IMG/VR virus record: IMGVR_UViG_3300042868_007959
Location: 62,001 to 126,000 of that record
Strand: one strand, 5' to 3'
DNA: 64,000 bases
The notes below the pieces were generated by a model, which worked only from the letters and a program-made list of their open reading frames with translations, was not told the origin of the DNA and made no database searches. Made by a program: the position numbers and the translations under genes. Positions 13,718-39,847 of the stretch are shown piece by piece; within the stretch, counting starts at the first letter, position 1, and each line of letters starts with the position of its first letter.

Positions 13718-13878
13718 AATTAGCGGAGATTTCATCCCATCCATTGATCACCCAAGGACTCGTTTCTAATGTATTTGGCACTCCGCCATTGTAAGTTTTC
13801 TGTTGCTTACGCCCTCATTCGTGGACTTCCGACATCCCAATGAGTTTTACCGTCCTATCGGAGTCAGGTAACCGCTTG

Positions 13879-13970
13879 TAGTCAGGACAGGACTCGAACC
13901 TGTATGTACAGTTATACAGAACTGCACATCCCTGTATGGATATTTGCGTCTACCATTTCGCCACCTGACT
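13879..13970 (-). ncRNA. tRNA-scaffold element F (non-canonical anticodon arm)
   Basis: AGTCAGG/CCTGACT acceptor, Leu-type D arm, ACAGG-TTCGAGT-CCTGT T arm; 42-nt insert with two hairpins. Confidence 0.8.
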
Positions 13971-25278: not shown

Positions 25279-25779
25279 TCAAATCTTTCTAAGTATTAAA
25301 CAACCATCTGAATCAAGTTTTGGATTACCTGTAGTTATACACTCACCTTTTCTGTTTACACCATCACAAGTAGGATCTAAACATTCTTCAACTATCTCAA
25401 CATCCCATTCAGTTTGTTGTAGTGATGTAATATATTCACCCAATGTTTCCTTATGATCTTGAAACTTTAATGCCTTGTTCCAACAATTCATCATATCTTC
25501 TAAAGTGAATAATTTATTTTTATTCAATTCGATTGATTTTTGGAATCCTTGTTTGAATGATCCGTAGTTATCTCCAACCTCATTATTATTGTTTGACCAT
25601 TTATGACTATTCACGTCAATCCATTCTTCAGCCAACTCATCCAAATCATAACCACGCTCAATTGATTCACAGTTTTTAACAGATAACCTAGCATAAGGTG
25701 CGTTCTCATCTGTAGCATACATAATGTTGTTTACTAATAGCATCCAACCATTATCTAATTTATTTAGTTTTGTTTTCAT
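25279..25779 (-). CDS. Hypothetical protein
   Basis: ORF track. Confidence 0.72.
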   Translation of the reverse strand: MKTKLNKLDNGWMLLVNNIMYATDENAPYARLSVKNCESIERGYDLDELAEEWIDVNSHKWSNNNNEVGDNYGSFKQGFQKSIELNKNKLFTLEDMMNCWNKALKFQDHKETLGEYITSLQQTEWDVEIVEECLDPTCDGVNRKGECITTGNPKLDSDGCLILRKI

Positions 25780-26155
25780 ACCTTTTAATTTTTTCTAACT
25801 CTTCCTTCAATACATCAACTTCGTATTCCCATTTTTCCATATCATAAAGATGATCATTATATTGACATCTTTTGACATTGAACTCCATAATATAGAGTTC
25901 TCTTTCTACGTCTTTTATAGTTCTTTTATTCATAATGTTTAACCAAAAAAACCACCAAAGTATAAAATAGAAGTATAAATTAAAACACTGATAAATGTCA
26001 CAAAAAAATCATGATCACCAGTTTTTGGTTTACCGTGCAAGTGTGCACCGAATAATAAGTTTGTCCCCAAAAGTATTATCATTAAAATTTGACTCATTCC
26101 CATATTAAAATTTTAGTTAATACAAAACTAATAATTATTTTCCAATAAAACAAAT

Positions 26156-26536
26156 TTATTTGAATTTACCAACTGGACATTCATCAATAAGTTGTTTTAG
26201 TTTGTCTTTTAACTTGTTGAACTCTTTTCTACCTTTTATCAATGTTTTACACTTTGGATAAAATCGTATTGTGTCTTCAAATTTTTCAGTTTCAATTTCA
26301 AAATCAAAAATAATATTTTCAATATTCTTATAATACCCAATATCAATATCAAACCAAGGAAAGTTTTCACCCCAATTTTTATGTCCCCAACAAGATTGTG
26401 TTGTCCCAATGTTGTTATAATTCAATAAAACAATTAATTCTCTAATACCCTCATCAATACCACAACCCAATCCATCGGTAATTATTTTTGATTTCTCATC
26501 TATTTTTTTATATCTATCATTCATAGGATAAAACAA
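26156..26536 (-). CDS. Hypothetical protein
   Basis: IDEGI...LN...TTQSCWGH motif. Confidence 0.72.
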   Translation of the reverse strand: MFYPMNDRYKKIDEKSKIITDGLGCGIDEGIRELIVLLNYNNIGTTQSCWGHKNWGENFPWFDIDIGYYKNIENIIFDFEIETEKFEDTIRFYPKCKTLIKGRKEFNKLKDKLKQLIDECPVGKFK

Positions 26537-26551
26537 ATTAATAACTAAAAA

Positions 26552-26603
26552 TATAACAAATGATAAACAACATTAAAACGATTGTTTATCATCGGACGTT
26601 ATA
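26552..26603. repeat. attC-like inverted-repeat element 1
   Basis: TATAAC-AA-ATGATAAACAA...TTGTTTATCAT-CGGAC-GTTATA; identical to 28580-28631. Confidence 0.7.
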
Positions 26604-26628
26604 ACCAATACTACGAAAGTGTTCCAAA

Positions 26629-26826
26629 TTAAGTTTTTTCAAGTAATGAATTATCCAATTCTATATCTAAACCAAATAGTGATTTTTCAATTACTTCACG
26701 TATTGTTAATGTTGGTTCATCTTTCATAATATTTAAACAAACTAACATTAACTCATTTGTTCTATCAGTTTGATTGGTGAATTTAATCACATAATCAATA
26801 AATTTTAAATCATCAAAATGTTTCAT
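26629..26826 (-). CDS. Hypothetical protein
   Basis: ORF track. Confidence 0.6.
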   Translation of the reverse strand: MKHFDDLKFIDYVIKFTNQTDRTNELMLVCLNIMKDEPTLTIREVIEKSLFGLDIELDNSLLEKT

Positions 26827-26828
26827 AA

Positions 26829-27197
26829 TTAATTAAGTATTATTTCACCACACATTCTTTCATTATTTATAAATTCCTCACCATCAAACAATTTATCACT
26901 GAATTTAACACCAGCACCAATAATTTCACCTTCTTTTCTTTGAATAAAATGTTTTAATTCAAAAATATCATTACGATAAATAAAGATTCTATCAATCTCA
27001 TTTTCAAAAATAACATCATATTTATCATCAAAAATACTTGTATCAACAATGTCTAATAAACTAGTTGGTATTTTTATAATATTTTGTCCATTCATTAAAC
27101 ACGCTTTACTGATTTGTGCCGAAATTTGATTTGATTTAGTTAGTAATAACTGTGATGTTATCTCACCAGTTAATTTAATTTTCCAAGATGTTTCCAT
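26829..27197 (-). CDS. Hypothetical protein
   Basis: ORF track; own TATATTTG promoter upstream. Confidence 0.7.
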   Translation of the reverse strand: METSWKIKLTGEITSQLLLTKSNQISAQISKACLMNGQNIIKIPTSLLDIVDTSIFDDKYDVIFENEIDRIFIYRNDIFELKHFIQRKEGEIIGAGVKFSDKLFDGEEFINNERMCGEIILN

Positions 27198-27297
27198 AAT
27201 TTTTCTTTTTTTTTTACAAATATACTAATTATTTTTCATTTAATCAAGTTTTATCTTAAAATCACCGTACTGGTTATAACCAATACTACTTTTGTTC

Positions 27298-27678
27298 TTA
27301 GATGTTAGTATCTGAGTTAAAACTTTTTAAAATTTCTTGACATTTCCTCCAAGAAAAACAATCTTCACCCTCATAAAACCAATCATCAGTTTTAAAATTT
27401 GGATGTTTCTTATCATTATCATACTCTTCACCAAAATCTCTGGTTAATGAATATACCTCATTGTTAATAATTAAAGTAACTGTCATAGTACCAATCCACG
27501 CACCTTTCATATATTCATCTTCAATGATCCTATTGGTTGATGTTACGTTAACTGAATCTGGTTCGTGTTTGAATATGACTTTAAAATCATCTTTTATCAT
27601 AGTTTCCAGTGATTGTGGGGAACCTTCCATTAACCCATATAATCTACTTACAATAAATTCTTTGTATTTGTTTTCCAT
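27298..27678 (-). CDS. Hypothetical protein
   Basis: ORF track. Confidence 0.7.
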   Translation of the reverse strand: MENKYKEFIVSRLYGLMEGSPQSLETMIKDDFKVIFKHEPDSVNVTSTNRIIEDEYMKGAWIGTMTVTLIINNEVYSLTRDFGEEYDNDKKHPNFKTDDWFYEGEDCFSWRKCQEILKSFNSDTNI

Positions 27679-27886
27679 TGTTTTAGTATTTCTTTAATAA
27701 CATCTTCCCATTGATTGGTTTCGGTTATATGTTTAATTTTGTTTTCTGAAAAAGAAGATACTTGTCTATGACCTTCTTTATCAGTAATAATAATCTCCAT
27801 TTTAGATTCCATAATCTATTTTTTTTTACAAATATACTAATTATTTCCCAATTAGTCAAGTTTTATCTTAAAATCACCGTACTGGT

Positions 27887-27978
27887 TATAACAACGTGTA
27901 TATTCAAGTTTGCATCAGCATTTGTGCATAATTCAAATTTAATCAAAGCAAACCTGAAATATACACGCATCCGTTATA
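27887..27978. repeat. attC-like inverted-repeat element 2
   Basis: TATAAC-AA-CGTGTATATT...AATATACACG-CATCC-GTTATA. Confidence 0.68.
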
Positions 27979-27990
27979 CACAATATTTTT

Positions 27991-28179
27991 TTACCCACCC
28001 AAAACCCATTTCATTAACGCATTCATTGAGTGTTGTTCATTTTCACCATTAATGTGTTCTTGTATATTTTCAATAGTTACATCATCGTATTTATTTGGAT
28101 TTCTAACCTTATCCATTAATAATTCAAGATGTCTTAACATTTCATCGTATTTTTCTCTAATTTCGGTTTCCGTTCTCAT
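27991..28179 (-). CDS. Hypothetical protein
   Basis: ORF track. Confidence 0.7.
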   Translation of the reverse strand: MRTETEIREKYDEMLRHLELLMDKVRNPNKYDDVTIENIQEHINGENEQHSMNALMKWVLGG

Positions 28180-28511
28180 AATTTTTCAACCCATTCTAAA
28201 TTTTTAGTTAATGTCCATAAACAATTAACATCATCTACATCTTTACTAACAAATCTTTCTGTTATATCTTCACCAGTGTCAACATTCTTTACAGATTTTA
28301 TTTTTAAAAATGGATTTTGACCAACAAGTTCAACTAATAAATCAGATGGTTTTGGTGTTGGTTCTTCTTTGAAGATGTTTTTGAAAAACTCTTTATGTTC
28401 ACCACTAATTTCAAGCGAATTTATTTTACTTTCACGTTCTTCTGTTAATGAATAATCTTTATCATTACCTTTTATTAAGTAAACACCATTCTTTAATTCT
28501 TCTTTTTCCAT
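28176..28511 (-). CDS. Hypothetical protein
   Basis: ORF track. Confidence 0.7.
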   Translation of the reverse strand: MEKEELKNGVYLIKGNDKDYSLTEERESKINSLEISGEHKEFFKNIFKEEPTPKPSDLLVELVGQNPFLKIKSVKNVDTGEDITERFVSKDVDDVNCLWTLTKNLEWVEKL

Positions 28512-28579
28512 AATTTATATTTTTTTTACAAATATACTAATTTATTTTTAATTTATCAACCCTCCCACAAAATACTGTG

Positions 28580-28631
28580 TATAACAAATGATAAACAACA
28601 TTAAAACGATTGTTTATCATCGGACGTTATA
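28580..28631. repeat. attC-like inverted-repeat element 3
   Basis: Exact copy of element 1. Confidence 0.7.
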
Positions 28632-28632
28632 T

Positions 28633-28788
28633 TCAATTAAAAATTACTAACATAAGTAGAAAAATTACTATAAAAAGTTGTATTGTGTAATTATTTGTTG
28701 TTATGTAGTCATAACCAAGATTGATTGTTACTTCCTCATTTTCCCAATCATCCCACTTTTTATATAATTTTTTTATAAATTTAATCAT
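28633..28788 (-). CDS. 51-aa membrane micro-ORF
   Basis: Manual translation MIKFIKKLYKKWDDWENEEVTINLGYDYITTNNYTIQLFIVIFLLMLVIFN; stop abuts element 3. Confidence 0.6.
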   Translation of the reverse strand: MIKFIKKLYKKWDDWENEEVTINLGYDYITTNNYTIQLFIVIFLLMLVIFN

Positions 28789-28802
28789 AATTTTTAACTA
28801 AA

Positions 28803-28893
28803 TATAACAAGGTATATGTGAAATACCTCATAAAGTTTCTACTAAATTTTAAAGTTCTGTGGTAAGGTACTTCACATATACCCGACCGTTATA
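28803..28893. repeat. attC-like inverted-repeat element 4
   Basis: TATAAC-AA-GGTATATGTGAA...TTCACATATACC-CGACC-GTTATA; contains the TAA stop of the upstream ORF. Confidence 0.68.
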
Positions 28894-29083
28894 AAACATT
28901 ATAGTTGTTTTTTATTTTACTCCATAATTTTCCAAAAGCATTACCCATATTTCTATCATTAAAATCAATTGCACCTTGAATATACGCATCATTTACAATT
29001 TTCTCTAGTTCATAGTATGTAAATGAATATTTTTTTGATTCTTGCTTTACTATTTCTTTCTTTCTAAATAATTTTCCTATCAT
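28889..29083 (-). CDS. Hypothetical protein
   Basis: ORF track 28889-29155 overlaps tRNA-Leu; likely start MIGKLF at 29083. Confidence 0.6.
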   Translation of the reverse strand: MIGKLFRKKEIVKQESKKYSFTYYELEKIVNDAYIQGAIDFNDRNMGNAFGKLWSKIKNNYNVL

Positions 29084-29149
29084 AATAAACGTTTTATAAC
29101 AACAAATATAGATATTAATTTCTATATAAACAAATTTTTTTAAAAATAG

Positions 29150-29224
29150 TACCAAAGGTGAGATTCGAACTCACAAACCTTTGTTTCTAAGACAAAGAGG
29201 TATACCGATTCCCGTCACTTTGGC
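29150..29224 (-). tRNA. tRNA-Leu(TAG), short variable loop
   Basis: TTTGT-CT TAG AA-ACAAA; 5-nt variable region. Confidence 0.88.
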
Positions 29225-29230
29225 ATTTTG

Positions 29231-29303
29231 AGCAGGTAGAGAGAATCGAACTCTCGTCCTCTGATTGGAAGTCAGACATAATAAGCCACTATACGATACC
29301 TGC
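29231..29303 (-). tRNA. tRNA-Gly(TCC)
   Basis: TCTGA-CT TCC AA-TCAGA; U73. Confidence 0.95.
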
Positions 29304-29473
29304 ATTAAGATTATTTTCTCTTAATCTTTTTTTTTAATTTAATAAATTTTATTAATCTTATTAAATTAATAGAATTTTTTCTAGACTCGATAATATTAAA
29401 ATTATCTTTCGATGATCTACCAGAACCCGTCATTACCTCTCTCATACTTATTTATTTTACTTTTTATTATTTG

Positions 29474-29547
29474 TGGATACATCTCGGCTTCGAACCGAGG
29501 ACTCCTGAGTGCAAATCAGGTGTGATAGCCAGCTTCACCAATGACCC
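29474..29547 (-). tRNA. tRNA-Ala(TGC), one-nt acceptor bulge
   Basis: CCTGA-TT TGC AC-TCAGG; G3:U70. Confidence 0.85.
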
Positions 29548-29550
29548 AAA

Positions 29551-29628
29551 TGGTTGCGGGACTGGGACTCGAACCCAGAACTTCGGCTTATGAGACCGAC
29601 GAGATAACCAATTTCTACATATCCCGCA
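29551..29628 (-). tRNA. tRNA-Met(CAT), initiator-like, CCA encoded
   Basis: TGCGGGA/TCCCGCA-A-CCA; TCGGT-CT CAT AA-GCCGA. Confidence 0.92.
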
Positions 29629-29661
29629 ATTTTTAATTACACCGAATTCGGTATAATTGAG

Positions 29662-29736
29662 TTCCCCCGACAGGATTCGAACCTGTGGCCCGTACATTAA
29701 AAGTGTAATGCTCTAAACCAACTGAGCTACGAGGGA
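29662..29736 (-). tRNA. tRNA-Lys(TTT)
   Basis: TTACA-CT TTT AA-TGTAC. Confidence 0.93.
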
Positions 29737-29742
29737 TTGTTG

Positions 29743-29814
29743 AGGTTTCGCTCAGATTCGAACTGAGGACACTTGATTACAAATCAAGAGTTTTACCGAC
29801 TAAACTACAAAACC
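29743..29814 (-). tRNA. tRNA-Thr(TGT)
   Basis: CTTGA-TT TGT AA-TCAAG. Confidence 0.93.
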
Positions 29815-29820
29815 TAATTG

Positions 29821-29894
29821 TCACCCGTATGGGATTTGAACCCATGATCTTTTCCGTGAAAGGGAAACGACTTAAACCGCTTGTCCAACGGGCG
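29821..29894 (-). tRNA. tRNA-Glu(TTC)
   Basis: TTTCC-CT TTC AC-GGAAA. Confidence 0.93.
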
Positions 29895-29902
29895 ATATTT
29901 AG

Positions 29903-29975
29903 TAGTCTCTGTAGGGTTCGAACCTACGACAACTTGCATGTAAAACAAGTGCTCTACCAACTGAGCTAAGAGACT
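29903..29975 (-). tRNA. tRNA-Val(TAC)
   Basis: CTTGT-TT TAC AT-GCAAG. Confidence 0.95.
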
Positions 29976-29976
29976 G

Positions 29977-30052
29977 TGGCGGTCCATGACGGTTACGATC
30001 CGTCTACTCTACCGTGACAGGGTAGGATGATAAGCCATTTCACCAATAGACC
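29977..30052 (-). tRNA. tRNA-Asp(GTC), atypical T-loop, CCA encoded
   Basis: CTACC-CT GTC AC-GGTAG; T-loop ATCGTAA. Confidence 0.88.
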
Positions 30053-30056
30053 ATTT

Positions 30057-30202
30057 AAATGATAATCAGGATTAGATTATATACGTGCTCTACCAACTGA
30101 GCTACCGCCGCCCCGAAGGACAACGGACAGGATTCGAACCTGCGACACCGAGCTTAAAAGGCTAATGTAATTGTTGCTGAAACAATCCTTTTATTATCAT
30201 TT
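30057..30202 (-). ncRNA. Y-RNA-like (YrlA-like) RNA with circularly permuted tRNA-Lys module
   Basis: Terminal stem AAATGATAAT/ATTATCATTT; order: CT-TTT-AA hairpin, T arm, acceptor CCGTTGTCC-TTCG-GGGCGGCGG, D arm GCTCAGTTGGTAGAGC. Confidence 0.78.
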
Positions 30203-30203
30203 G

Positions 30204-30289
30204 AGGAAGAGGTAGGATTCGAACCTACGGTACCTTTCAGTACGCTAGTTTTCAAGACTAGTACAATAAACCAACTCTGTCACTCTTCC
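30204..30289 (-). tRNA. tRNA-Ser(TGA)
   Basis: CTAGT-CT TGA AA-ACTAG; long variable arm. Confidence 0.95.
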
Positions 30290-30298
30290 AATTTTTAC

Positions 30299-30315
30299 CA
30301 ATACGTCAAAGAACT
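30299..30315 (-). promoter_or_regulatory. boxA-like element
   Basis: AGTTCTTTGACGTATTG between the terminator and first tRNA. Confidence 0.7.
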
Positions 30316-30321
30316 AAAAAC

Positions 30322-30350
30322 AAAAAACCCTAAGTTCTCACTTAGGGTTT
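30322..30350 (-). terminator. Attenuator terminator 1
   Basis: AAACCCTAAG-TGAGAA-CTTAGGGTTT-TTT upstream of the tRNA-Ser(TGA) operon. Confidence 0.8.
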
Positions 30351-30379
30351 CCATTATATAGTATTTAAATTTTTAAATG

Positions 30380-30478
30380 TTATCTATTACAATATACCCT
30401 AAGATCTGGTTGCAGCGAATCCGCTCCCTCCATTTTCGTCTTAACGACCTCTAATCTGTATGTCATTGTATTTTTCAT
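30380..30478 (-). CDS. Putative leader peptide 1 (32 aa) MKNTMTYRLEVVKTKMEGADSLQPDLRVYCNR
   Basis: Manual translation; lies between promoter and terminator; contains antiterminator copy CTTAGGGT at 30396-30403. Confidence 0.6.
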   Translation of the reverse strand: MKNTMTYRLEVVKTKMEGADSLQPDLRVYCNR

Positions 30479-30509
30479 TGAAATTTTTACCTTTTTAATT
30501 AAATATACA

Positions 30510-30541
30510 TAAAGTTACGAAAGTTTCTTCAAAAAGTCAAA
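30510..30541 (-). promoter_or_regulatory. Bacteroidota-type promoter
   Basis: TTTGAC...TAACTTTA. Confidence 0.65.
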
Positions 30542-30578
30542 TAATTTTTAATTTTTTTTAAAATTTATTTTATTTAAG

Positions 30579-30652
30579 AGGTCAGAGAGGGATTCGAACC
30601 CCCGAATAATGGATTTGCAGTCCACCCCTTTAAACCACTCAGGCATCTGACC
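30579..30652 (-). tRNA. tRNA-Cys(GCA)
   Basis: GTGGA-CT GCA AA-TCCAT; U73. Confidence 0.95.
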
Positions 30653-30721
30653 ATTAGTTCACTAAACTATAATTTGCTCGATAAACTATATCTGTTTATT
30701 GTAGCAAAAATAAGTTTATTG

Positions 30722-30794
30722 TACACTCTGAGAGATTCGAACTCCCATCTTATAGTCCGTAGCCATATGTTCTGATCCGTTGAACTAAGAGTGT
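30722..30794 (-). tRNA. tRNA-Arg(ACG)
   Basis: TATGG-CT ACG GA-CTATA. Confidence 0.93.
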
Positions 30795-30796
30795 AT

Positions 30797-30871
30797 TGGT
30801 AGGGATGGGTGGAGTCGAACCACCGAGACAACTGTATAAGAGTTGCATGTTCACCGTTACATCACATCCCC
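30797..30871 (-). tRNA. tRNA-Ile(TAT), CCA encoded
   Basis: CAACT-CT TAT AC-AGTTG; A73-CCA. Confidence 0.88.
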
Positions 30872-30878
30872 ATTTTTG

Positions 30879-30966
30879 CGGAAAGAATAGGATTCGAACC
30901 TATGGTACCCTTACGAGTACAACACCTTAGCAGGGTGCCTCAATAAACCAACTCTGACATCTTTCC
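30879..30966 (-). tRNA. tRNA-Ser(GCT)
   Basis: GCACC-CT GCT AA-GGTGT; long variable arm; G73. Confidence 0.95.
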
Positions 30967-30971
30967 ATTTG

Positions 30972-31045
30972 GGTGTATGACGGGAATTGAACCCGTGACC
31001 TTTTGATTCACAATCAAACACTCTAACCAACTGAGCTACATACAC
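30972..31045 (-). tRNA. tRNA-His(GTG), no encoded G-1
   Basis: TTTGA-TT GTG AA-TCAAA; C73; base at -1 is T. Confidence 0.92.
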
Positions 31046-31047
31046 AG

Positions 31048-31118
31048 TTGTCTCCCAAGGATTCGAACCTCGATTCAGTGGTCCAAAACCACTTGTCCTG
31101 CCTTTAGACGAGGAGACA
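31048..31118 (-). tRNA. tRNA-Gln(TTG)
   Basis: AGTGG-TT TTG GA-CCACT. Confidence 0.93.
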
Positions 31119-31181
31119 ATTTAAAATTATTCACTACCCAAATATCGAATTTTTTACTACTTTTGGGAAGTTAATAATTAG

Positions 31182-31256
31182 TCTGGGTAGCGAGACTCGA
31201 ACTCACATTATGTCCACATCCCAAATGTGGCGGCTTACCAATTAGCCAATACCCAG
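31182..31256 (-). tRNA. tRNA-Pro(TGG)
   Basis: CCACA-TT TGG GA-TGTGG. Confidence 0.93.
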
Positions 31257-31263
31257 TTAAAAG

Positions 31264-31337
31264 TGGTGATGGGTGGAATCGAACCACCGACAACCTAGAT
31301 CTTCAATCTAGTGCTCTACCAACTGAGCTACATCACC
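31264..31337 (-). tRNA. tRNA-Phe(GAA)
   Basis: CTAGA-TT GAA GA-TCTAG. Confidence 0.95.
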
Positions 31338-31342
31338 ATTTG

Positions 31343-31415
31343 CACATCTCCAAGGATTCGAACCCTGATCAAACGATTTGGAGTCGTTTATGCTAAACCA
31401 TTACACCAGAGATGT
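31343..31415 (-). tRNA. tRNA-Trp(CCA)
   Basis: AACGA-CT CCA AA-TCGTT; G73. Confidence 0.95.
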
Positions 31416-31419
31416 GTAT

Positions 31420-31498
31420 AAATGTTCAGGAAGACTTTTTGTTTTCAAATTTCCGATCTTGATTTTTTTATTTTGCTGAAATCTTCCTTTTAACATTT
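31420..31498 (-). ncRNA. Minimal Y-RNA-like stem (no tRNA module)
   Basis: AAATGTT-AAAAGGAAGA-TTTCAGCAA...GTCTTCC-TG-AACATTT; same architecture as the 30057-30202 terminal stem. Confidence 0.65.
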
Positions 31499-31499
31499 G

Positions 31500-31582
31500 T
31501 GAGGGTAGTAGGATTCGAACCTACTCAGTCATAGACAACAGATTTACAGTCTGCCCCAACTCTCCAACTTTGGCGTACCCCC
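31500..31582 (-). tRNA. tRNA-Tyr(GTA)
   Basis: GCAGA-CT GTA AA-TCTGT; long variable arm. Confidence 0.95.
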
Positions 31583-31598
31583 ATTATTAATTTAATCA

Positions 31599-32138
31599 CT
31601 AAACATTTATTAAACCCGCATGTATTTCTGAATGACAATTAGAACACACTAAAATACATTTATCTACTTCATATTTTAATTTTTCGAAGGATAAACTTTT
31701 ACCTGATATTGTAAAATCTTTACTATTAGGATTTAAATGGTGGAATTCTAACGCATTAAAACATTTGTTATATCCACAAATTTGACACTTACCACCTTTA
31801 TATTCTACTAATCTAATTTTCACTCTCTTTCTCCATAAAATAACAGATTCAGAAGATGTCATTGTTTTAATTCTATCTTTAGTTTTAATATATTTTTTTA
31901 AAGTATCAAAAGAACGTTTAGTTATTTTAGATACTTTTTTTATTGAACCTAGTTCATCATATAATTTTTGATATAATTCAATGTCCTCTTTAGTAGTTTT
32001 TTGATTATTATCACCTAAACCATTCATTTTACAATGATAAGAAACTGTAGACATTGCACACCCTAAAATCTTAGTTATCTCTTTATACGTTTTACCTTCT
32101 TTTCTTAATTCTAAAATTTTTTTCGAATACCTTTCCAT
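31599..32138 (-). CDS. HNH homing endonuclease with N-terminal HTH
   Basis: KTYKEITKILGCAMSTVSYH; GGKCQICGY...LEFHHLNP...KCILVCSNCHSEIH. Confidence 0.9.
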   Translation of the reverse strand: MERYSKKILELRKEGKTYKEITKILGCAMSTVSYHCKMNGLGDNNQKTTKEDIELYQKLYDELGSIKKVSKITKRSFDTLKKYIKTKDRIKTMTSSESVILWRKRVKIRLVEYKGGKCQICGYNKCFNALEFHHLNPNSKDFTISGKSLSFEKLKYEVDKCILVCSNCHSEIHAGLINV

Positions 32139-32215
32139 AAGATTAACATTTTTAATTAATAAATATGGTATAATACTAATAATTTAATTTTAAAAAATCA
32201 ATAGGTAAAAAATTG

Positions 32216-32302
32216 CTGACGGGGTGGGATTCGAACCCACGGTGGAGAAATTCTCGTCGGATTAACAGTCCGATGCGTTCGGCCTACTACGCGAACCCGT
32301 CA
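32216..32302 (-). tRNA. tRNA-Asn(GTT) with long variable arm
   Basis: TCGGA-CT GTT AA-TCCGA; 16-nt variable arm with GAGA/TCTC stem; G73. Confidence 0.88.
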
Positions 32303-32315
32303 TTTACTTTCATAA

Positions 32316-32333
32316 CAATATGTCAAAGAACTT
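32316..32333 (-). promoter_or_regulatory. boxA-like element
   Basis: AAGTTCTTTGACATATTG. Confidence 0.7.
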
Positions 32334-32341
32334 TTGTTCTG

Positions 32342-32417
32342 TCGGTATGGTAGGGATCGAACCTACGAATCTTCTCGATATCAGCGAGATGCCTTAAACC
32401 AACTTGGCCACATACCG
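32342..32417 (-). tRNA. tRNA-Ile(GAT)
   Basis: TCTCG-CT GAT AT-CGAGA. Confidence 0.95.
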
Positions 32418-37623: not shown

Positions 37624-37794
37624 AATCTTTTTATCTATAAAGTAAAATTAATAAAAAAATCCGAATCTGCCAAATTTTTTTATATAAATATTTGTTAAAA
37701 ATAAAAAAGTCCCGAATTAACGGGACTTTAAAGGGCCGATAGGATCACTATCAACTTCCACCACTTCGTTTTTAAGGAACAAAGAAACCTAATG

Positions 37795-38192
37795 TGGAGA
37801 TGGAGGGAGTCGAACCCTCGTCCAATCAAATTGCCATTAAAAATTCATTCACAAGCTTAGTTCATTTTTCTTAATGAACAAAATATTTGGTTTTATTTAT
37901 AACATGGTTACCAACAACCCTGTTTCGATAATTGTTTAGAGAGTTTTACCGTCAACTCTATTTTTTACACCTTTCTGTTTCTAGGTAAGTGTGACCCACC
38001 GATTAAACTAATTCCATTAATTCAATCTCTTCAACCACCGCTGAGCGAGTGATAGAAGTTGGGATACTCATCATATCCTCTGTGTTGTATGCGTTTGCAT
38101 TTATATTTTGATAGGTGTTTAAGGGTTTCCATCTAACCCTGCTTGCATCATTTCAAACTCAACCTTTGACTGTCAAATCCAAAACCATCCCC
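37795..38192 (-). ncRNA. ssrA: tmRNA
   Basis: 5' GGGGATGGTTTTGGATTTGAC; 3' GAGGGTTCGACTCCCTCCATCTCCA; G3:U70; resume context ATAAAT-GCA; tag ORF 38003-38098; no encoded CCA. Confidence 0.93.
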
Positions 38193-38719: not shown

Positions 38720-38978
38720 TTTCTAAATCTTTAAAAGAATCATAATCGAATAAATCACTTTTCAAAAGATCAAAAACATCTTTAATCATTTTACCTTGCG
38801 TTTTATGATCTAAACCCTCACAAGCAATTTTAGTAGTCATAACTAATCCACTAACCATAATTGATAATAACTCAAATTTTGTTGGTCCTGAATCACCTTC
38901 ATACATTTCAAAATTTAAATATAATCTACCGTCTTCTTTTACTTCAGAAACAATAGTAACTTTTTTTTTACCTTTCAT
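38700..38978 (-). CDS. Hypothetical protein
   Basis: ORF track. Confidence 0.68.
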   Translation of the reverse strand: MKGKKKVTIVSEVKEDGRLYLNFEMYEGDSGPTKFELLSIMVSGLVMTTKIACEGLDHKTQGKMIKDVFDLLKSDLFDYDSFKDLEIKMEEL

Positions 38979-38979
38979 C

Positions 38980-39468
38980 TTAAACGATTTCTTCGATTAT
39001 ACCAATTAATTCACTAACAACTAATAAAGTTGTTGCAACAATTAAGTTATATGGTATAAAACAATACCCAACTATCCTAACACCAGATTTAATAAAAGAT
39101 ATTATCTGATGCCACTTTTGATTTGGTATCTTATCAATGTCTTTATCACTTTTATAATATTCCACTTTTTGTATCATTTTATCCCTATAAGAATTTAATG
39201 GGTTCTTTTTACCCGTCAATTCCTCATAAAAAGGATTTAACTCACCAGTTTGTGGATCGTGTGTGGGAATCTCAAAATTAGTTTTCCAATTAGAAGATTC
39301 ATTATCATTTAAATTAGATGCGATTTCAATATTACTTAAAACTACCCCAACATTTTCATAGTTAGGTACTGGTGTATTAAGTATCTCTTCTGATAAGACA
39401 TCAAATAATCTTTTAACATCCTCACCAATAAATTCTAATCTTCTTTTATAATCATTTTCTCTTTTCAT
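38980..39468 (-). CDS. Hypothetical protein with C-terminal TM hairpin
   Basis: ORF track. Confidence 0.68.
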   Translation of the reverse strand: MKRENDYKRRLEFIGEDVKRLFDVLSEEILNTPVPNYENVGVVLSNIEIASNLNDNESSNWKTNFEIPTHDPQTGELNPFYEELTGKKNPLNSYRDKMIQKVEYYKSDKDIDKIPNQKWHQIISFIKSGVRIVGYCFIPYNLIVATTLLVVSELIGIIEEIV

Positions 39469-39847
39469 AAGGTTCTTTCATTTGAATTTTAATCATCAAA
39501 CTTGTTACTTCTTCAGGTGATAACCAACCCTCAACCTCTATACTATCATCAGAAAGAGGAAACCCTACCTCAAATGTTTTAACACCATCACCATATAAAC
39601 CTTGACCACCACCAATTACAGAAGCATAGTGTCCATTGTCGAAATTTAATACCGACTGAACTGCACCTTCCATCCATTCATTTCCGTGTTTCCCAAATTT
39701 TAAATCGGAAAACGTTTTAAGATCGTTAGGATATAATTCTTTAATGAAATTAAAATCATAACCCATTTCATTATGTAAAATACTAAATTTTTCGTAGTTA
39801 GGTTTACCACTCAAATAATCTAATAATTTTTGTGTCAGTTTTTCCAT
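39452..39847 (-). CDS. Hypothetical protein
   Basis: F.NG..ASVIGG...YGDG..TFEV motif. Confidence 0.72.
   Translation of the reverse strand: MEKLTQKLLDYLSGKPNYEKFSILHNEMGYDFNFIKELYPNDLKTFSDLKFGKHGNEWMEGAVQSVLNFDNGHYASVIGGGQGLYGDGVKTFEVGFPLSDDSIEVEGWLSPEEVTSLMIKIQMKEPYEKRK

What the first reader, a model, noticed from the sequence alone, without database searches (positions are those of the whole stretch)
26156..29083. attC-like cassette array without an integrase
Four elements share TATAAC-AA-[inverted repeat]-5 nt-GTTATA (26552, 27887, 28580, 28803). Two are identical 52-mers; the others have unrelated stems. Each follows a minus-strand ORF stop closely (overlapping in element 4, 2 nt in element 3, 13 and 25 nt in elements 2 and 1), as attC R'' sites do. 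Several cassettes carry their own duplicated TATATTTG promoter block (~27205-27283, ~27820-27892). No tyrosine recombinase is in the window. This would be a CALIN-like array in a phage, possibly using a host or distant integrase (inference).
Basis: partly seen in the sequence, partly recalled or inferred. Interest (0 to 1): 0.65.

Follow-up and report, generated by a model that had tools for sequence, protein, structure and literature searches.

The report
Phage integron-like gene cassette array
Four hairpin-forming sites in this large phage genome mark the borders of small mobile gene cassettes; they belong to an integron-like gene-swapping system whose recombinase gene sits beside the same kind of array in related phages but is missing here.

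Summary
Four elements of the form TATAAC-AA-[hairpin]-CNNNC-GTTATA lie at 26552, 27887, 28580 and 28803, all on one strand, and nowhere else in the 254-kb record.

- The same architecture occurs in over 500 copies on about 150 uncultured phage contigs. It has invariant TAACA and CGTTA ends, a 3-4 nt bulge, covarying stems and one better-folding strand.
- Thirty-four loci were fetched only by homology to a 265-aa Xer/IntI-clade tyrosine recombinase found in two relatives. They hold 108 such hairpins upstream of that gene in one orientation, against 1 downstream.
- A conserved attI-like site lies 55-75 nt before the recombinase start. Neighbouring cassettes switch exactly there.
- Whole cassettes (median 405 nt) are 98-100% identical in unrelated flanks, with borders at CGTTA. 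This includes window cassette 27973-28628.

This genome holds no recombinase, so its array resembles a CALIN (an attC cluster lacking an integrase).

It is not a canonical integron. The recombinase lacks the IntI-specific insertion, the cassette ORFs are inverted, and several cassettes carry their own promoter.

No recombination was observed directly. I found no published description.

The parts
26552..26603 (+). attC-like site e1 (short H1 family, 52 nt). On the + strand it reads R''-like TATAAC, AA, 11-bp stem, conserved loop, stem, CGGAC, R'-like GTTATA. The minus strand is the better-folding 'bottom' strand.
   Evidence: (minus -16.4 against plus -11.9 kcal/mol). It is the right border of a 94.5%-identical shared block that ends at CGTTAT.
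27887..27978 (+). attC-like site e2 (long H2 family, 92 nt).
   Evidence: (-33.7 against -23.4). Compensatory stem changes relative to copies in G001 and G002. The block shared with L122 starts exactly at GTTA, position 27973.
28580..28631 (+). attC-like site e3, identical to e1.
   Evidence: The 97.8%-identical block shared with L061 ends at its GTTATA.
28803..28893 (+). attC-like site e4 (diverged H2 family, 91 nt). Its GTTA holds the TAA stop of ORF 28889-29083.
   Evidence: (-32.4 against -26.5). Copies 90-93% identical in L056 and L103.
27267..27286 (.). Hairpin-less site: a 20-bp near-palindrome with overlapping R''/R' motifs (GGTTATAACC). It is a cassette junction without a variable hairpin.
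   Evidence: (I22-I24, D13). G001 has TATAAC-AAAT-GTTATA at the equivalent junction.
27207..27280 (-). Promoter block P, copy 1 (TTG, about 20 nt, TATATTTG), in front of ORFs 26829-27197 and 26629-26826.
   Evidence: (D2). It is 92-97% identical in G001 and G002, although the core genes share only about 42% amino-acid identity.
27819..27892 (-). Promoter block P, copy 2, in front of ORFs 27648-27812 and 27298-27678.
28519..28559 (-). Promoter block, partial third copy, in front of ORFs 28176-28511 and 27991-28179.
26156..26597 (-). Cassette c0: ORF A (126 aa) plus e1.
   Evidence: 26180-26607 is 94-95% identical to L091 and L101, with unrelated flanks. The same ORF is the recombinase-proximal cassette in L098.
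26598..27272 (-). Cassette c1: ORF B (65 aa), ORF C (122 aa) and promoter block.
   Evidence: ORF B is 93.5% identical in nucleotides to G001 283570-283755.
27273..27972 (-). Cassette c2: ORF D (126 aa), ORF E (54 aa), promoter block and e2.
   Evidence: ORF E plus the promoter block is 94.4% identical to G001 284598-284812.
27973..28625 (-). Cassette c3: ORF F (62 aa), ORF G (111 aa), promoter and e3.
   Evidence: 638 nt are 97.8% identical to L061. The match to L122 begins exactly at 27973.
28626..28887 (-). Cassette c4: ORF H (51 aa) plus e4.
28888..29110 (-). Cassette c5 or distal end of the array: ORF I (64 aa from the ATG at 29083), its own TATATTTG box, and a degenerate TTGTTATAAAACG motif next to the tRNA cluster.
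   Evidence: The assignment as the array end is inferred.

Best explanation
**What it is.** The four elements are recombination sites of an integron-like cassette system of uncultured phages, probably of Bacteroidota. In this window they bound five or six small cassettes. The cassettes encode ORFan proteins, and several have their own promoter.

**Site anatomy.**
- Read on the window's + strand, each site is R''(TAAC)-A-N-[L'' ... variable loop ... L']-C-N3-4-C-R'(GTTA).
- The minus strand, which is also the mRNA-sense strand, is the one that folds.
- The fold has a lower stem (AACG paired with UGUU, extendable to about 12 bp), a 3-4 nt bulge flanked by G.T wobbles, and an upper stem with a conserved TA.

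**Layout in related phages.** Recombinase gene, then an attI-like site (TAAC|TAT-N-ATATAT on the sense strand, 55-75 nt before the start codon), then an array of cassettes each ending in such a hairpin. This is the canonical integron geometry, but the cassette ORFs are inverted so that they are co-oriented with the recombinase gene.

**Shown.**
- The site architecture and its covariation.
- The exclusive one-sided association with the recombinase gene.
- Identical cassettes in unrelated flanks, with borders at CGTTA.
- Different cassettes abutting identical attI-like sites.

**Inferred.**
- A Xer-like tyrosine recombinase binds the folded strand and exchanges strands in or next to C|GTTA, as IntI does on attC and as XerCD does on folded CTX-phage DNA.
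- In this genome, which has no recombinase in 254 kb (78% complete), the array is either a fossil, or is served in trans during co-infection, or is served by a gene in the missing 22%.
- The cargo serves host take-over and counter-defence.
For: **Site architecture.**
- 378 unique elements have non-imposed conservation: A after TAAC in 98%, A after CGTT in 96%, T at +10 in 98%, and A at +11 of the right flank in 96%.
- Thirty H1 variants give 8 of 14 pairs with compensatory double changes, plus invariant AACG and TGTTA.
- There are 55 distinct stem arms with about 95% Watson-Crick pairs.

**Strand specificity.**
- The minus/bottom strand folds better in 113 of 117 viral copies.
- Wobbles fall 65 to 23 in its favour.

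**Recombinase link.**
- G001 and G002 encode a PF00589 recombinase (E 1e-39) at the array end.
- About 17 of 119 hairpin-centred loci encode a homologue, always on the same side and in the same orientation.
- In 34 loci fetched by recombinase homology alone, 108 hairpins lie upstream in the same orientation, 1 lies downstream and 2 are inverted.
- The genes downstream of the recombinase fall into 18 unrelated groups among 29 loci.

**attI-like site.** It has a conserved motif. Near-identical site-plus-recombinase sequences abut different cassettes, switching at TAAC| (L261/L262/L265, L266/L267, L251/L252, L042/L098).

**Discrete cassettes.**
- Of the ends of HSPs (aligned segments) at least 200 nt long and at least 88% identical, 48 of 103 left ends and 58 of 103 right ends lie within 60 nt of a site border. 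Random positions do so in 9% of cases. The peak is on CGTT.
- G002:61477-61791 equals L047:2999-3313 at 100%, and L258 equals L271 at 99.4%, with unrelated flanks on both sides sharing only CGTTA.
- In the window, 27973-28628 and 26180-26607 behave the same way.

**Genome-wide contrast.** Between G000 and the 362-kb G001, every HSP of at least 85% identity lies within window 26549-28629. Meanwhile a conserved flanking gene (a metallophosphatase-like ORF) shows about 42% amino-acid identity.

**Dimensions.**
- Sites are about 48, 88 or 124 nt long.
- Median cassette length is 405 nt.
- The ORF lies on the recombinase strand in 342 of 358 cassettes.
Against: - No recombination event, circular cassette or protein-DNA contact has been observed. 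Reads could not be examined.
- G000 has no recombinase.
- The recombinase lacks the roughly 47-aa IntI-specific region. It scores below the curated cut-offs of the integron-integrase and XerA models.
- Some exchange is clearly not site-specific. Hybrid hairpins with arms of two types exist. The G000/G001 homologies of ORF B and ORF E end at gene borders rather than at sites. About half of the HSP ends are not near a site.
- Window cassettes hold two ORFs and their own promoter, unlike typical integron cassettes.
- The recombinase could be a lysogeny or dimer-resolution enzyme whose neighbourhood is simply hypervariable.
- The hairpins may also, or instead, act on RNA, because they lie in the mRNA-sense strand between genes.
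Confidence: 0.72

Rival explanations
1. PeSL-type regulatory cassettes, as described for T4-type phages. In this reading the hairpins are terminators or RNA-stabilising stem-loops that, together with the promoter block, punctuate transcription units. Their conservation merely makes them patches for general homologous recombination, which shuffles neighbouring ORFans. No dedicated recombinase is involved.
For: - The order stop codon, hairpin, promoter, next ATG is exactly that of PeSLs (PMC2839356).
- The 74-nt promoter block is repeated and conserved across phages.
- The hairpin is in the mRNA-sense strand, and G.U pairs favour that strand.
- Hybrid hairpins indicate crossovers inside the loop.
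- Some homology ends at gene borders.
Against: - Cassette borders fall on a 5-nt core shared by otherwise unrelated hairpin families. That is too short for homologous recombination.
- TAACA, CGTTA, the bulge and positions +10 and +11 are conserved across three hairpin families. A terminator has no need for this.
- None of the four hairpins scores as an intrinsic terminator.
- Most cassettes elsewhere show no enrichment of the promoter motif: 130 sense against 125 antisense.
- The strict one-sided association with one recombinase family is left unexplained.
Confidence: 0.15
2. Selfish miniature hairpin elements (MITE, REP or PATE-like). In this reading they insert into a TAAC/GTTA-containing palindromic target, moved by a transposase encoded elsewhere. 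The cassette appearance is a by-product.
For: - A hairpin-less 'empty' palindrome lies at 27267-27286, and a mini version occurs in G001.
- The same flank occurs with different hairpin cores.
- Solitary copies lie in Flavobacteriaceae chromosomes.
Against: - No Y1/HUH transposase is present in G000.
- The elements are strictly co-oriented and confined to arrays beside the recombinase, not dispersed.
- The unit that is identical between contexts is ORF plus hairpin, not the hairpin alone.
- There are no target-site duplications.
Confidence: 0.06
3. Purely RNA-level elements on polycistronic phage mRNA, such as RNase III-type processing sites or binding sites for a regulatory protein. They would have no role in DNA rearrangement.
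For: - A long interrupted helix with a conserved 3-nt bulge flanked by G.U pairs resembles T7 RNase III sites (my own knowledge).
- The loop is invariant across H1 variants.
Against: - It explains neither the cassette borders, nor the attI-like junctions, nor the link to the recombinase.
- In Flavobacteriaceae chromosomes the same strand folds better although the flanking genes run the other way.
Confidence: 0.05

Closest known systems
Integrons (IntI, attI, attC cassette arrays) and CALINs
   Same: - A tyrosine recombinase of the Xer/IntI clade next to an attI-like site, followed by co-oriented cassettes that each end in an imperfect hairpin site.
- AAC...GTT core ends, unpaired or extrahelical bases, a variable terminal structure of 48-124 nt, and one preferred folding strand.
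- Cassette borders at (C)G|TTA.
- Arrays without a recombinase also occur, as in this window.
- The stop codon often lies inside the TAAC box.
   Different: - The recombinase is 265 aa and lacks the IntI-specific insertion. Its best solved relative is archaeal XerA.
- The core is TAAC/GTTA rather than RYYYAAC/GTTRRRY.
- Cassette ORFs are inverted (co-oriented with the recombinase gene), so no Pc-type expression applies.
- Several cassettes carry their own Bacteroidota-type promoter.
- The system is carried by phages, including 250-360 kb ones.
CALINs reported in phage genomes (Qi et al. 2023, PMC9892861)
   Same: [quoted passage not shown] Methyltransferase cargo is also reported there.
   Different: - Those were 2-3 sites per phage, predicted with integron models and tested with bacterial IntI1.
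- No dedicated phage recombinase, attI-like site or large arrays were described.
- I could not test whether their sites belong to this family.
PeSL promoter/stem-loop cassettes of T4-type phages (PMC2839356, PMC4122927)
   Same: Repeated stem-loop plus promoter units between small ORFan genes in a hyperplastic region next to tRNA genes. They are associated with modular shuffling, and in T4-type phages with mini-circles.
   Different: PeSL exchange is by homology within the motif, and no recombinase is known. Here the borders sit on a 5-nt core, and a recombinase gene is tightly linked in relatives.
XerCD-mediated integration of folded single-stranded CTX phage DNA (IMEX elements); my own knowledge
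   Same: A Xer-type recombinase acting on a hairpin folded from one DNA strand that mimics a duplex core site.
   Different: CTX uses host XerCD and the chromosomal dif site to integrate a whole phage. Here the recombinase is phage-encoded, and the units are small cassettes in arrays.
Polaribacter phage Freya and Cellulophaga phage Ingeline (cultured; integrase 39-40% identical to P0002)
   Same: - Freya_10 differs from Freya_1 by a 4.9-kb block of 12 small ORFs inserted about 60 nt upstream of the integrase start.
- Both junctions end in TTGTT-N3-AAC|.
- Ingeline shares the motif TTGTTGCTAACACCC in front of its integrase.
   Different: The units are larger and have long structured intergenic regions. 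The TAAC-hairpin-CGTTA architecture was not found as such. The relationship is inferred.

Membership tests
Integron (sensu IntegronFinder: IntI + attC array) | Integrase of the IntI family, carrying the IntI-specific additional domain. | tested here: not met
   - No recombinase is present in G000.
- In relatives the linked recombinase scores 159 bits on TIGR02249 (cut-off 265), in two stretches.
- Against IntI4 (2a3v) it has 34 residues where IntI4 has 81.
Integron (sensu IntegronFinder: IntI + attC array) | attC sites: R''-L''...L'-R' imperfect palindromes with AAC/GTT cores and unpaired bases, conserved in structure rather than sequence. | tested here: inconclusive
   The architecture, covariation, bulge and strand bias are met. 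The 7-mer consensus RYYYAAC/GTTRRRY is only partly matched. The attC covariance model was not available.
Integron (sensu IntegronFinder: IntI + attC array) | Cassettes are discrete mobile units bounded at the G|TT of R'. | tested here: met
   Identical cassettes occur in unrelated flanks with borders at CGTTA. The exact cleavage position within the conserved core cannot be resolved.
Integron (sensu IntegronFinder: IntI + attC array) | An attI site between the integrase gene and the first cassette. | tested here: met
   Met in relatives only: a conserved TAAC|TAT-N-ATATAT motif lies 55-75 nt before the recombinase start, with cassette switching at that point. No convincing copy is present in the window.
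Integron (sensu IntegronFinder: IntI + attC array) | Promoterless cassettes co-oriented with a Pc promoter that reads away from intI. | tested here: not met
   ORFs lie on the recombinase strand in 342 of 358 cassettes. Window cassettes carry their own promoter blocks.
CALIN (cluster of attC sites lacking an integrase) | At least two attC sites close together, with no integrase nearby. | tested here: met
   Four sites lie within 2.3 kb and there is no recombinase in 254 kb. This holds with the proviso that the sites are attC-like rather than shown to be attC.
PeSL regulatory cassettes | Composite terminator stem-loop plus early promoter between ORFan genes. Exchange is by homology within the motif. 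| tested here: inconclusive
   The layout is met for three window cassettes. The hairpins do not score as terminators. Borders sit on a 5-nt core, which argues against homology alone. Promoter and terminator activity were not testable.
REP/RAYT or IS200/IS605-derived hairpin elements | An associated Y1 (HUH) transposase, and dispersed copies. | tested here: not met
   No PF01797 is present in G000. Copies are confined to co-oriented arrays.
Xer/dif-type recombination | A Xer-family recombinase acting on a duplex site of about 28 bp with two inverted arms. | tested here: inconclusive
   The recombinase is Xer-like: best model NF040815 at 186-194 bits against a cut-off of 220, and best solved relative XerA 4a8e. 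The 20-bp palindrome 27267-27286 has a 7-6-7 layout, but no binding data exist.

The most novel reading that the evidence does not exclude
A previously undescribed counterpart of the integron, carried by phages. A short Xer-type tyrosine recombinase without the IntI domain captures and reshuffles hairpin-tagged mini-cassettes at an attI-like site. This gives large Bacteroidota phages an exchangeable bank of host-takeover and counter-defence genes. The system is either an independent invention of folded-strand cassette recombination or a relative of the Xer-to-IntI transition.
Probability: 0.55. Interest if true: 0.92.

Novelty: new variant of a known kind. Interest (0 to 1): 0.85.

Why it matters
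Integrons are the textbook device for capturing and shuffling genes in bacteria. They are defined by a specialised integrase.

If confirmed, this system would matter for four reasons.
- It would show that phages run a parallel cassette economy of their own, with a simpler Xer-like enzyme.
- It would explain how ORFan genes and counter-defence genes move between phages that share almost no nucleotide similarity. Examples in the sampled cargo are DNA methyltransferases and a Tad6-family Thoeris inhibitor.
- It would provide a natural comparison for how recognition of folded single-stranded sites evolved.
- It would give a compact recombinase and site pair of possible use as a tool.

It also warns that annotating such hairpins as terminators, and the recombinase as a 'lysogeny integrase', may be wrong for large lytic phages.

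Tried and rejected
**Steps that led nowhere.**
- A megablast of the region against cultured phages found nothing.
- Rfam gives no family for the hairpins, only sub-threshold miRNA-like noise.
- Pfam and PHROGs leave all nine window ORFs unassigned.
- One viral-contig scan used a mis-specified H2 pattern and returned chance hits only.
No read-level evidence on circles, alternative junctions or RNA ends could be obtained, and read laying was not used.
- The genome search 'relatives' and 'of' are not available for virus records or loci.
- Literature searches for the loop 15-mer, and for phage integron-like systems with Xer-type recombinases, found no description.

**Ideas considered and rejected.**
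- K-turn motif: there are no G.A pairs after the bulge.
- The conserved TAACAA as a -33 promoter element: the spacing is wrong in the promoter block.
- Target-site duplication of GTTATAAC: no copy has it perfect on both sides.
- Two further detector hits in G000, at record positions 168495 and 202364: they lie in coding sequence and look spurious.
- A remnant attI-like site at 26105-26125: the resemblance is too weak.

**Left open.**
- Host recombinases 36-45% identical exist in Flavobacteriaceae genomes. They are longer, and no link to the solitary chromosomal hairpins was shown.


Full report
**1. Setting**

The window is positions 62001-126000 of a single 253,879-bp IMG/VR virus record (G000). 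The record has 29% G+C and is estimated 78% complete. Genes run almost entirely on the minus strand. The window holds 28 tRNA genes and a tmRNA.

A Bacteroidota host is an inference. It rests on three points:
- minus-strand promoters of the TAnnTTTG type;
- copies of the hairpin in Flavobacteriaceae chromosomes;
- the nearest cultured recombinase homologues lie in Cellulophaga and Polaribacter phages.

**2. The observation**

- 26552-26603 and 28580-28631 are identical 52-mers;
- 27887-27978 is 92 nt;
- 28803-28893 is 91 nt.

The loose pattern is not beyond chance on its own. The stricter TATAACAA...CGTTATA pattern gives 4 forward, 0 reverse and 0 control matches in the whole record.

All four fold much better than shuffled sequence. 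All fold better as the minus strand: -16.4 against -11.9, -33.7 against -23.4, and -32.4 against -26.5 kcal/mol. The cause is that A.C mismatches on the plus strand are G.U or G.T wobbles on the minus strand.

On the minus strand the fold is:
- a 7-bp lower stem (UAUAACG paired with UGUUAUA);
- a 3-nt bulge;
- a long upper stem.

The promoter block is a 74-nt repeat at 27207-27280 and 27819-27892, with a partial copy at 28519-28559.

A hairpin-less 20-bp near-palindrome at 27267-27286 joins the left flank seen at element 2 to the right flank seen at element 1.

Elements 2 and 4 are diverged homologues that share the central loop.

The nine ORFs between the sites have no Pfam or PHROG assignment.

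No tyrosine recombinase, serine recombinase or Y1 transposase is present in the record.

**3. Relatives and the first surprise**

An exact 18-mer from the promoter block/site junction led to two contigs. G001 is 362 kb and complete. G002 is a 64-kb fragment.

These phages are distant from G000. The one flanking protein with a match, a metallophosphatase-like ORF, is about 42% identical. Yet in a whole-genome comparison, every HSP (aligned segment) of at least 85% identity between G000 and G001 lies within window 26549-28629. These HSPs cover the hairpins, the promoter blocks and two tiny ORFs at 93-94% identity. The 52-mer is 100% identical in G002.

Alignment showed two hairpin families with the same invariant ends, TAAC-A and C-CGTTA:
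- H1 is short. Its loop is invariant and its stems covary.
- H2 is long.

**4. The element is widespread and structure-defined**

It also hit 61 stretches in prokaryotic assemblies.

In 139 viral copies:
- none lies inside a long ORF;
- 133 lie among co-oriented genes;
- the preceding ORF stops 0-20 nt away;
- in more than 20 cases the stop codon is the TAA of the site's own TAAC;
- the next ATG follows after 23-72 nt.

Other structural evidence:
- Stem arms come in 55 versions, with about 95% Watson-Crick pairs at positions 1-9.
- Wobbles favour one strand 65 to 23.
- That strand folds better in 113 of 117 copies.
- RNAalifold on 30 variants gives 8 of 14 pairs with compensatory double changes, plus invariant AACG and TGTTA.

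A generic detector (TAAC, hairpin, CGTT) found 506 elements. Their lengths cluster near 48, 88 and 124 nt.

Positions the detector did not impose are still conserved across 378 unique copies:
- A after TAAC (98%);
- A after CGTT (96%);
- T at +10 (98%);
- A at +11 of the right flank (96%).

A conserved C.A on the top strand, which is G.T on the bottom strand, extends the lower stem to about 12 bp.

**5. The recombinase**

G001 and G002 each encode a tyrosine recombinase of 265-268 aa (P0002 and P0001; PF00589 E about 1e-39) at the end of their hairpin arrays.

Family assignment:
- The best curated model is NF040815, 'XerA / integron integrase', at 186-194 bits against a cut-off of 220. XerC, XerD and the integron-integrase model follow. 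The last matches in two stretches.
- The best solved relative is Pyrococcus XerA (4a8e).
- Against IntI4 (2a3v) the protein has 34 residues where IntI4 has 81. It therefore lacks the IntI-specific domain.

Association with the hairpins:
- Homologues at 45-75% identity occur in about 17 of the 119 hairpin-centred loci. They are always on the same side and in the same orientation.
- The reverse test is independent of the hairpins. In 34 loci fetched by recombinase homology alone, the detector found 108 elements upstream of the gene in the same orientation, 1 downstream and 2 inverted. The sequence searched was 173 kb upstream and 294 kb downstream.
- The genes downstream of the recombinase fall into 18 unrelated groups among 29 loci. 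What is conserved is the module of array, site and recombinase, not a genomic neighbourhood.

**6. Geometry**

Read on the strand that shows TAAC...CGTTA (the window's + strand), the layout is:
- recombinase gene pointing left;
- an attI-like site;
- then repeated units of GTTA, ORF (antisense), TAAC-A, hairpin, C-N3-4-C.

This is the canonical integron arrangement. It includes the fact that the better-folding strand is the 'bottom' one. The difference is that the ORFs are inverted.

On the sense strand the attI-like site reads TAAC|TAT-N-ATATAT and lies 55-75 nt before the recombinase start.

Several sets of loci have near-identical site-plus-recombinase sequences but unrelated sequence beyond TAAC|. 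They are L261/L262/L265, L266/L267, L251/L252 and L042/L098.

**7. Cassettes are discrete units**

I compared about 1.55 Mb of array-bearing sequence all against all. I kept HSPs of at least 200 nt and at least 88% identity whose ends were not contig ends.
- 48 of 103 left ends and 58 of 103 right ends lie within 60 nt of a site border.
- Random positions do so in 9% of cases.
- The mode is on CGTT itself.

Individual cases are clean:
- G002:61477-61791 equals L047:2999-3313 at 100% over 315 nt.
- L258 equals L271 at 99.4% over 495 nt.
- In both, similarity starts at CGTTA and stops at the next CGTTA(T). Both flanks are unrelated, and the left-hand hairpins belong to different families.
- A shared core of 5 nt is too short for homologous recombination.

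The unit is therefore GTTA, ORF, TAAC, hairpin. On the sense strand, each hairpin belongs to the cassette whose ORF it precedes.

Summary figures:
- median cassette length is 405 nt (quartiles 325-600);
- median protein length is 84 aa;
- the ORF lies on the recombinase strand in 342 of 358 cassettes.

**8. The window's array read in this light**

Six cassettes are proposed:

| Cassette | Coordinates | Content |
|---|---|---|
| c0 | up to 26597 | ORF A plus e1 |
| c1 | 26598-27272 | ORFs B and C, promoter block, hairpin-less site |
| c2 | 27273-27972 | ORFs D and E, promoter block, e2 |
| c3 | 27973-28625 | ORFs F and G, promoter, e3 |
| c4 | 28626-28887 | ORF H, e4 |
| c5 | 28888 to about 29110 | ORF I, own promoter; then the tRNA cluster |

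Evidence within the window:
- c3 is 97.8% identical over 638 nt to L061, ending at the GTTATA of e3.
- The match of c3 to L122 begins exactly at the GTTA at 27973.
- c0 is 94-95% identical to L091 and L101, ending at CGTTAT. Its ORF is the recombinase-proximal cassette in L098.

Not everything is site-bounded. The ORF B and ORF E homologies with G001 end at gene borders. A few hybrid hairpins show crossovers inside the loop. General recombination therefore acts on these repeats too, as in PeSLs.

**9. Cargo**

I sampled 148 cassette proteins from the arrays. Most have no family. The named ones are:
- eight DNA methyltransferases;
- a Tad6-family Thoeris inhibitor (E 5e-41);
- a PARP-like domain;
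- YopX;
- GIY-YIG;
- phosphatases.

A host-takeover and counter-defence role is an inference from this cargo.

**10. Mechanism**

Shown:
- the site architecture and its covariation;
- the strand bias;
- the linkage to the recombinase;
- the attI-like junctions;
- the discrete cassettes.

Inferred by analogy with IntI on attC, and with XerCD on folded CTX-phage DNA (my own knowledge):
- The bottom strand folds when single-stranded.
- Recombinase monomers bind the lower (R) and upper (L) duplexes on either side of the bulge.
- One strand is exchanged in or next to C|GTTA.
- Replication resolves the product.

G000 has no recombinase in the 254 kb recovered. Its array is therefore CALIN-like. It could be served in trans, be a fossil, or be a secondary cluster. 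G002 shows such secondary clusters 15-29 kb away from its recombinase.

**11. Rivals**

- A PeSL-like regulatory role is compatible with the layout and may coexist. It does not explain the 5-nt borders, the conserved non-stem positions or the linkage to the recombinase. None of the four hairpins scores as an intrinsic terminator.
- The MITE/REP reading fails on distribution, on the absence of a transposase and on what the mobile unit is.
- An RNA-only reading does not explain the DNA-level facts.

**12. What is known**

- Integrons and CALINs are well known.
- CALINs of 2-3 predicted attC sites have been reported in phage genomes, some recombined by bacterial IntI1 (PMC9892861).
- PeSLs are described for T4-type phages (PMC2839356, PMC4122927).
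- I found no description of hairpin arrays linked to a Xer-type recombinase in phages. The library covers open-access papers only.

A cultured cousin may exist. Polaribacter phage Freya isolates differ by up to 4.9 kb (12 ORFs), inserted about 60 nt upstream of a 39%-identical integrase. Both junctions end in TTGTT-N3-AAC|. The isolation paper does not comment on this.

**13. Verdict**

- Confidence is about 0.7 that these are recombination sites bounding mobile cassettes.
- Direct evidence of recombination is missing.

Noticed in passing
L185, L192, L207, L215, L219, L220, L226, L230, L237, L242, L245 (Algibacter, Winogradskyella, Hwangdonia and other Flavobacteriaceae chromosomes): Solitary H1-type hairpins sit inside a conserved block of about 85 nt that begins with CTTGACTTTGTAAAAA. 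They lie in unrelated intergenic regions. The flanking genes run opposite to the phage arrangement, and an ORF starts 48-112 nt after the hairpin. No recombinase is nearby. Whether these are captured cassettes, secondary integration sites or a host-side element is unexplained.
   Followed up: partly
L282, L284-L286 (Polaribacter phages Freya_1 and Freya_10); L283 (Cellulophaga phage Ingeline_1): Freya isolates differ by a 4.9-kb, 12-ORF insertion placed exactly about 60 nt upstream of the integrase start. Both junctions end in TTGTT-N3-AAC. Ingeline carries the same TTGTTGCTAACACCC motif in front of its integrase. This is a possible cultured model of a related system.
   Followed up: partly
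window 13878-13970: ARAGORN calls a tRNA with a four-base anticodon (taca) among a first cluster of six tRNA genes. It may be a frameshift-suppressor-like or intron-bearing tRNA, or a miscall.
   Followed up: no
window 29149-32417 and 37794-38192: A block of 22 tRNA genes begins 40 nt beyond the distal end of the cassette array. A phage-encoded tmRNA lies 5 kb further on.
   Followed up: no
L051, L098 (near 3454 on the reverse strand), L139 (near 1163 on the reverse strand), L224: Hybrid H1 hairpins have a left arm of one stem type and a right arm of another. They are evidence of crossovers or template switches within the invariant loop.
   Followed up: partly
cassette ORFs in L042-L281 (alignment A2): Array cargo includes eight orphan DNA methyltransferases, a Tad6-family Thoeris inhibitor, a PARP-like ADP-ribosyltransferase domain, YopX and a GIY-YIG nuclease. 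About 85% have no Pfam family.
   Followed up: partly
phage records LR756500.1 (404149-404205) and LR745206.1 (590403-590452): H1-like hairpins (80-83% identical) occur in two published uncultured megaphage genomes of 462 and 635 kb. The family therefore reaches into the largest phages.
   Followed up: no
window 26099-26121 and 28190-28212: A 23-nt direct repeat (87% identical, containing TTTTAGTTAAT) lies at the proximal end of the array and again at the ORF F/ORF G junction. Its meaning is unknown. Its resemblance to the attI-like motif is weak.
   Followed up: partly
G002 (record positions 25695-29136 and 38974-39596): Secondary clusters of the same hairpins lie 15-29 kb away from the recombinase-linked main array in the same contig. 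Complete and recombinase-less arrays therefore coexist in one phage.
   Followed up: partly
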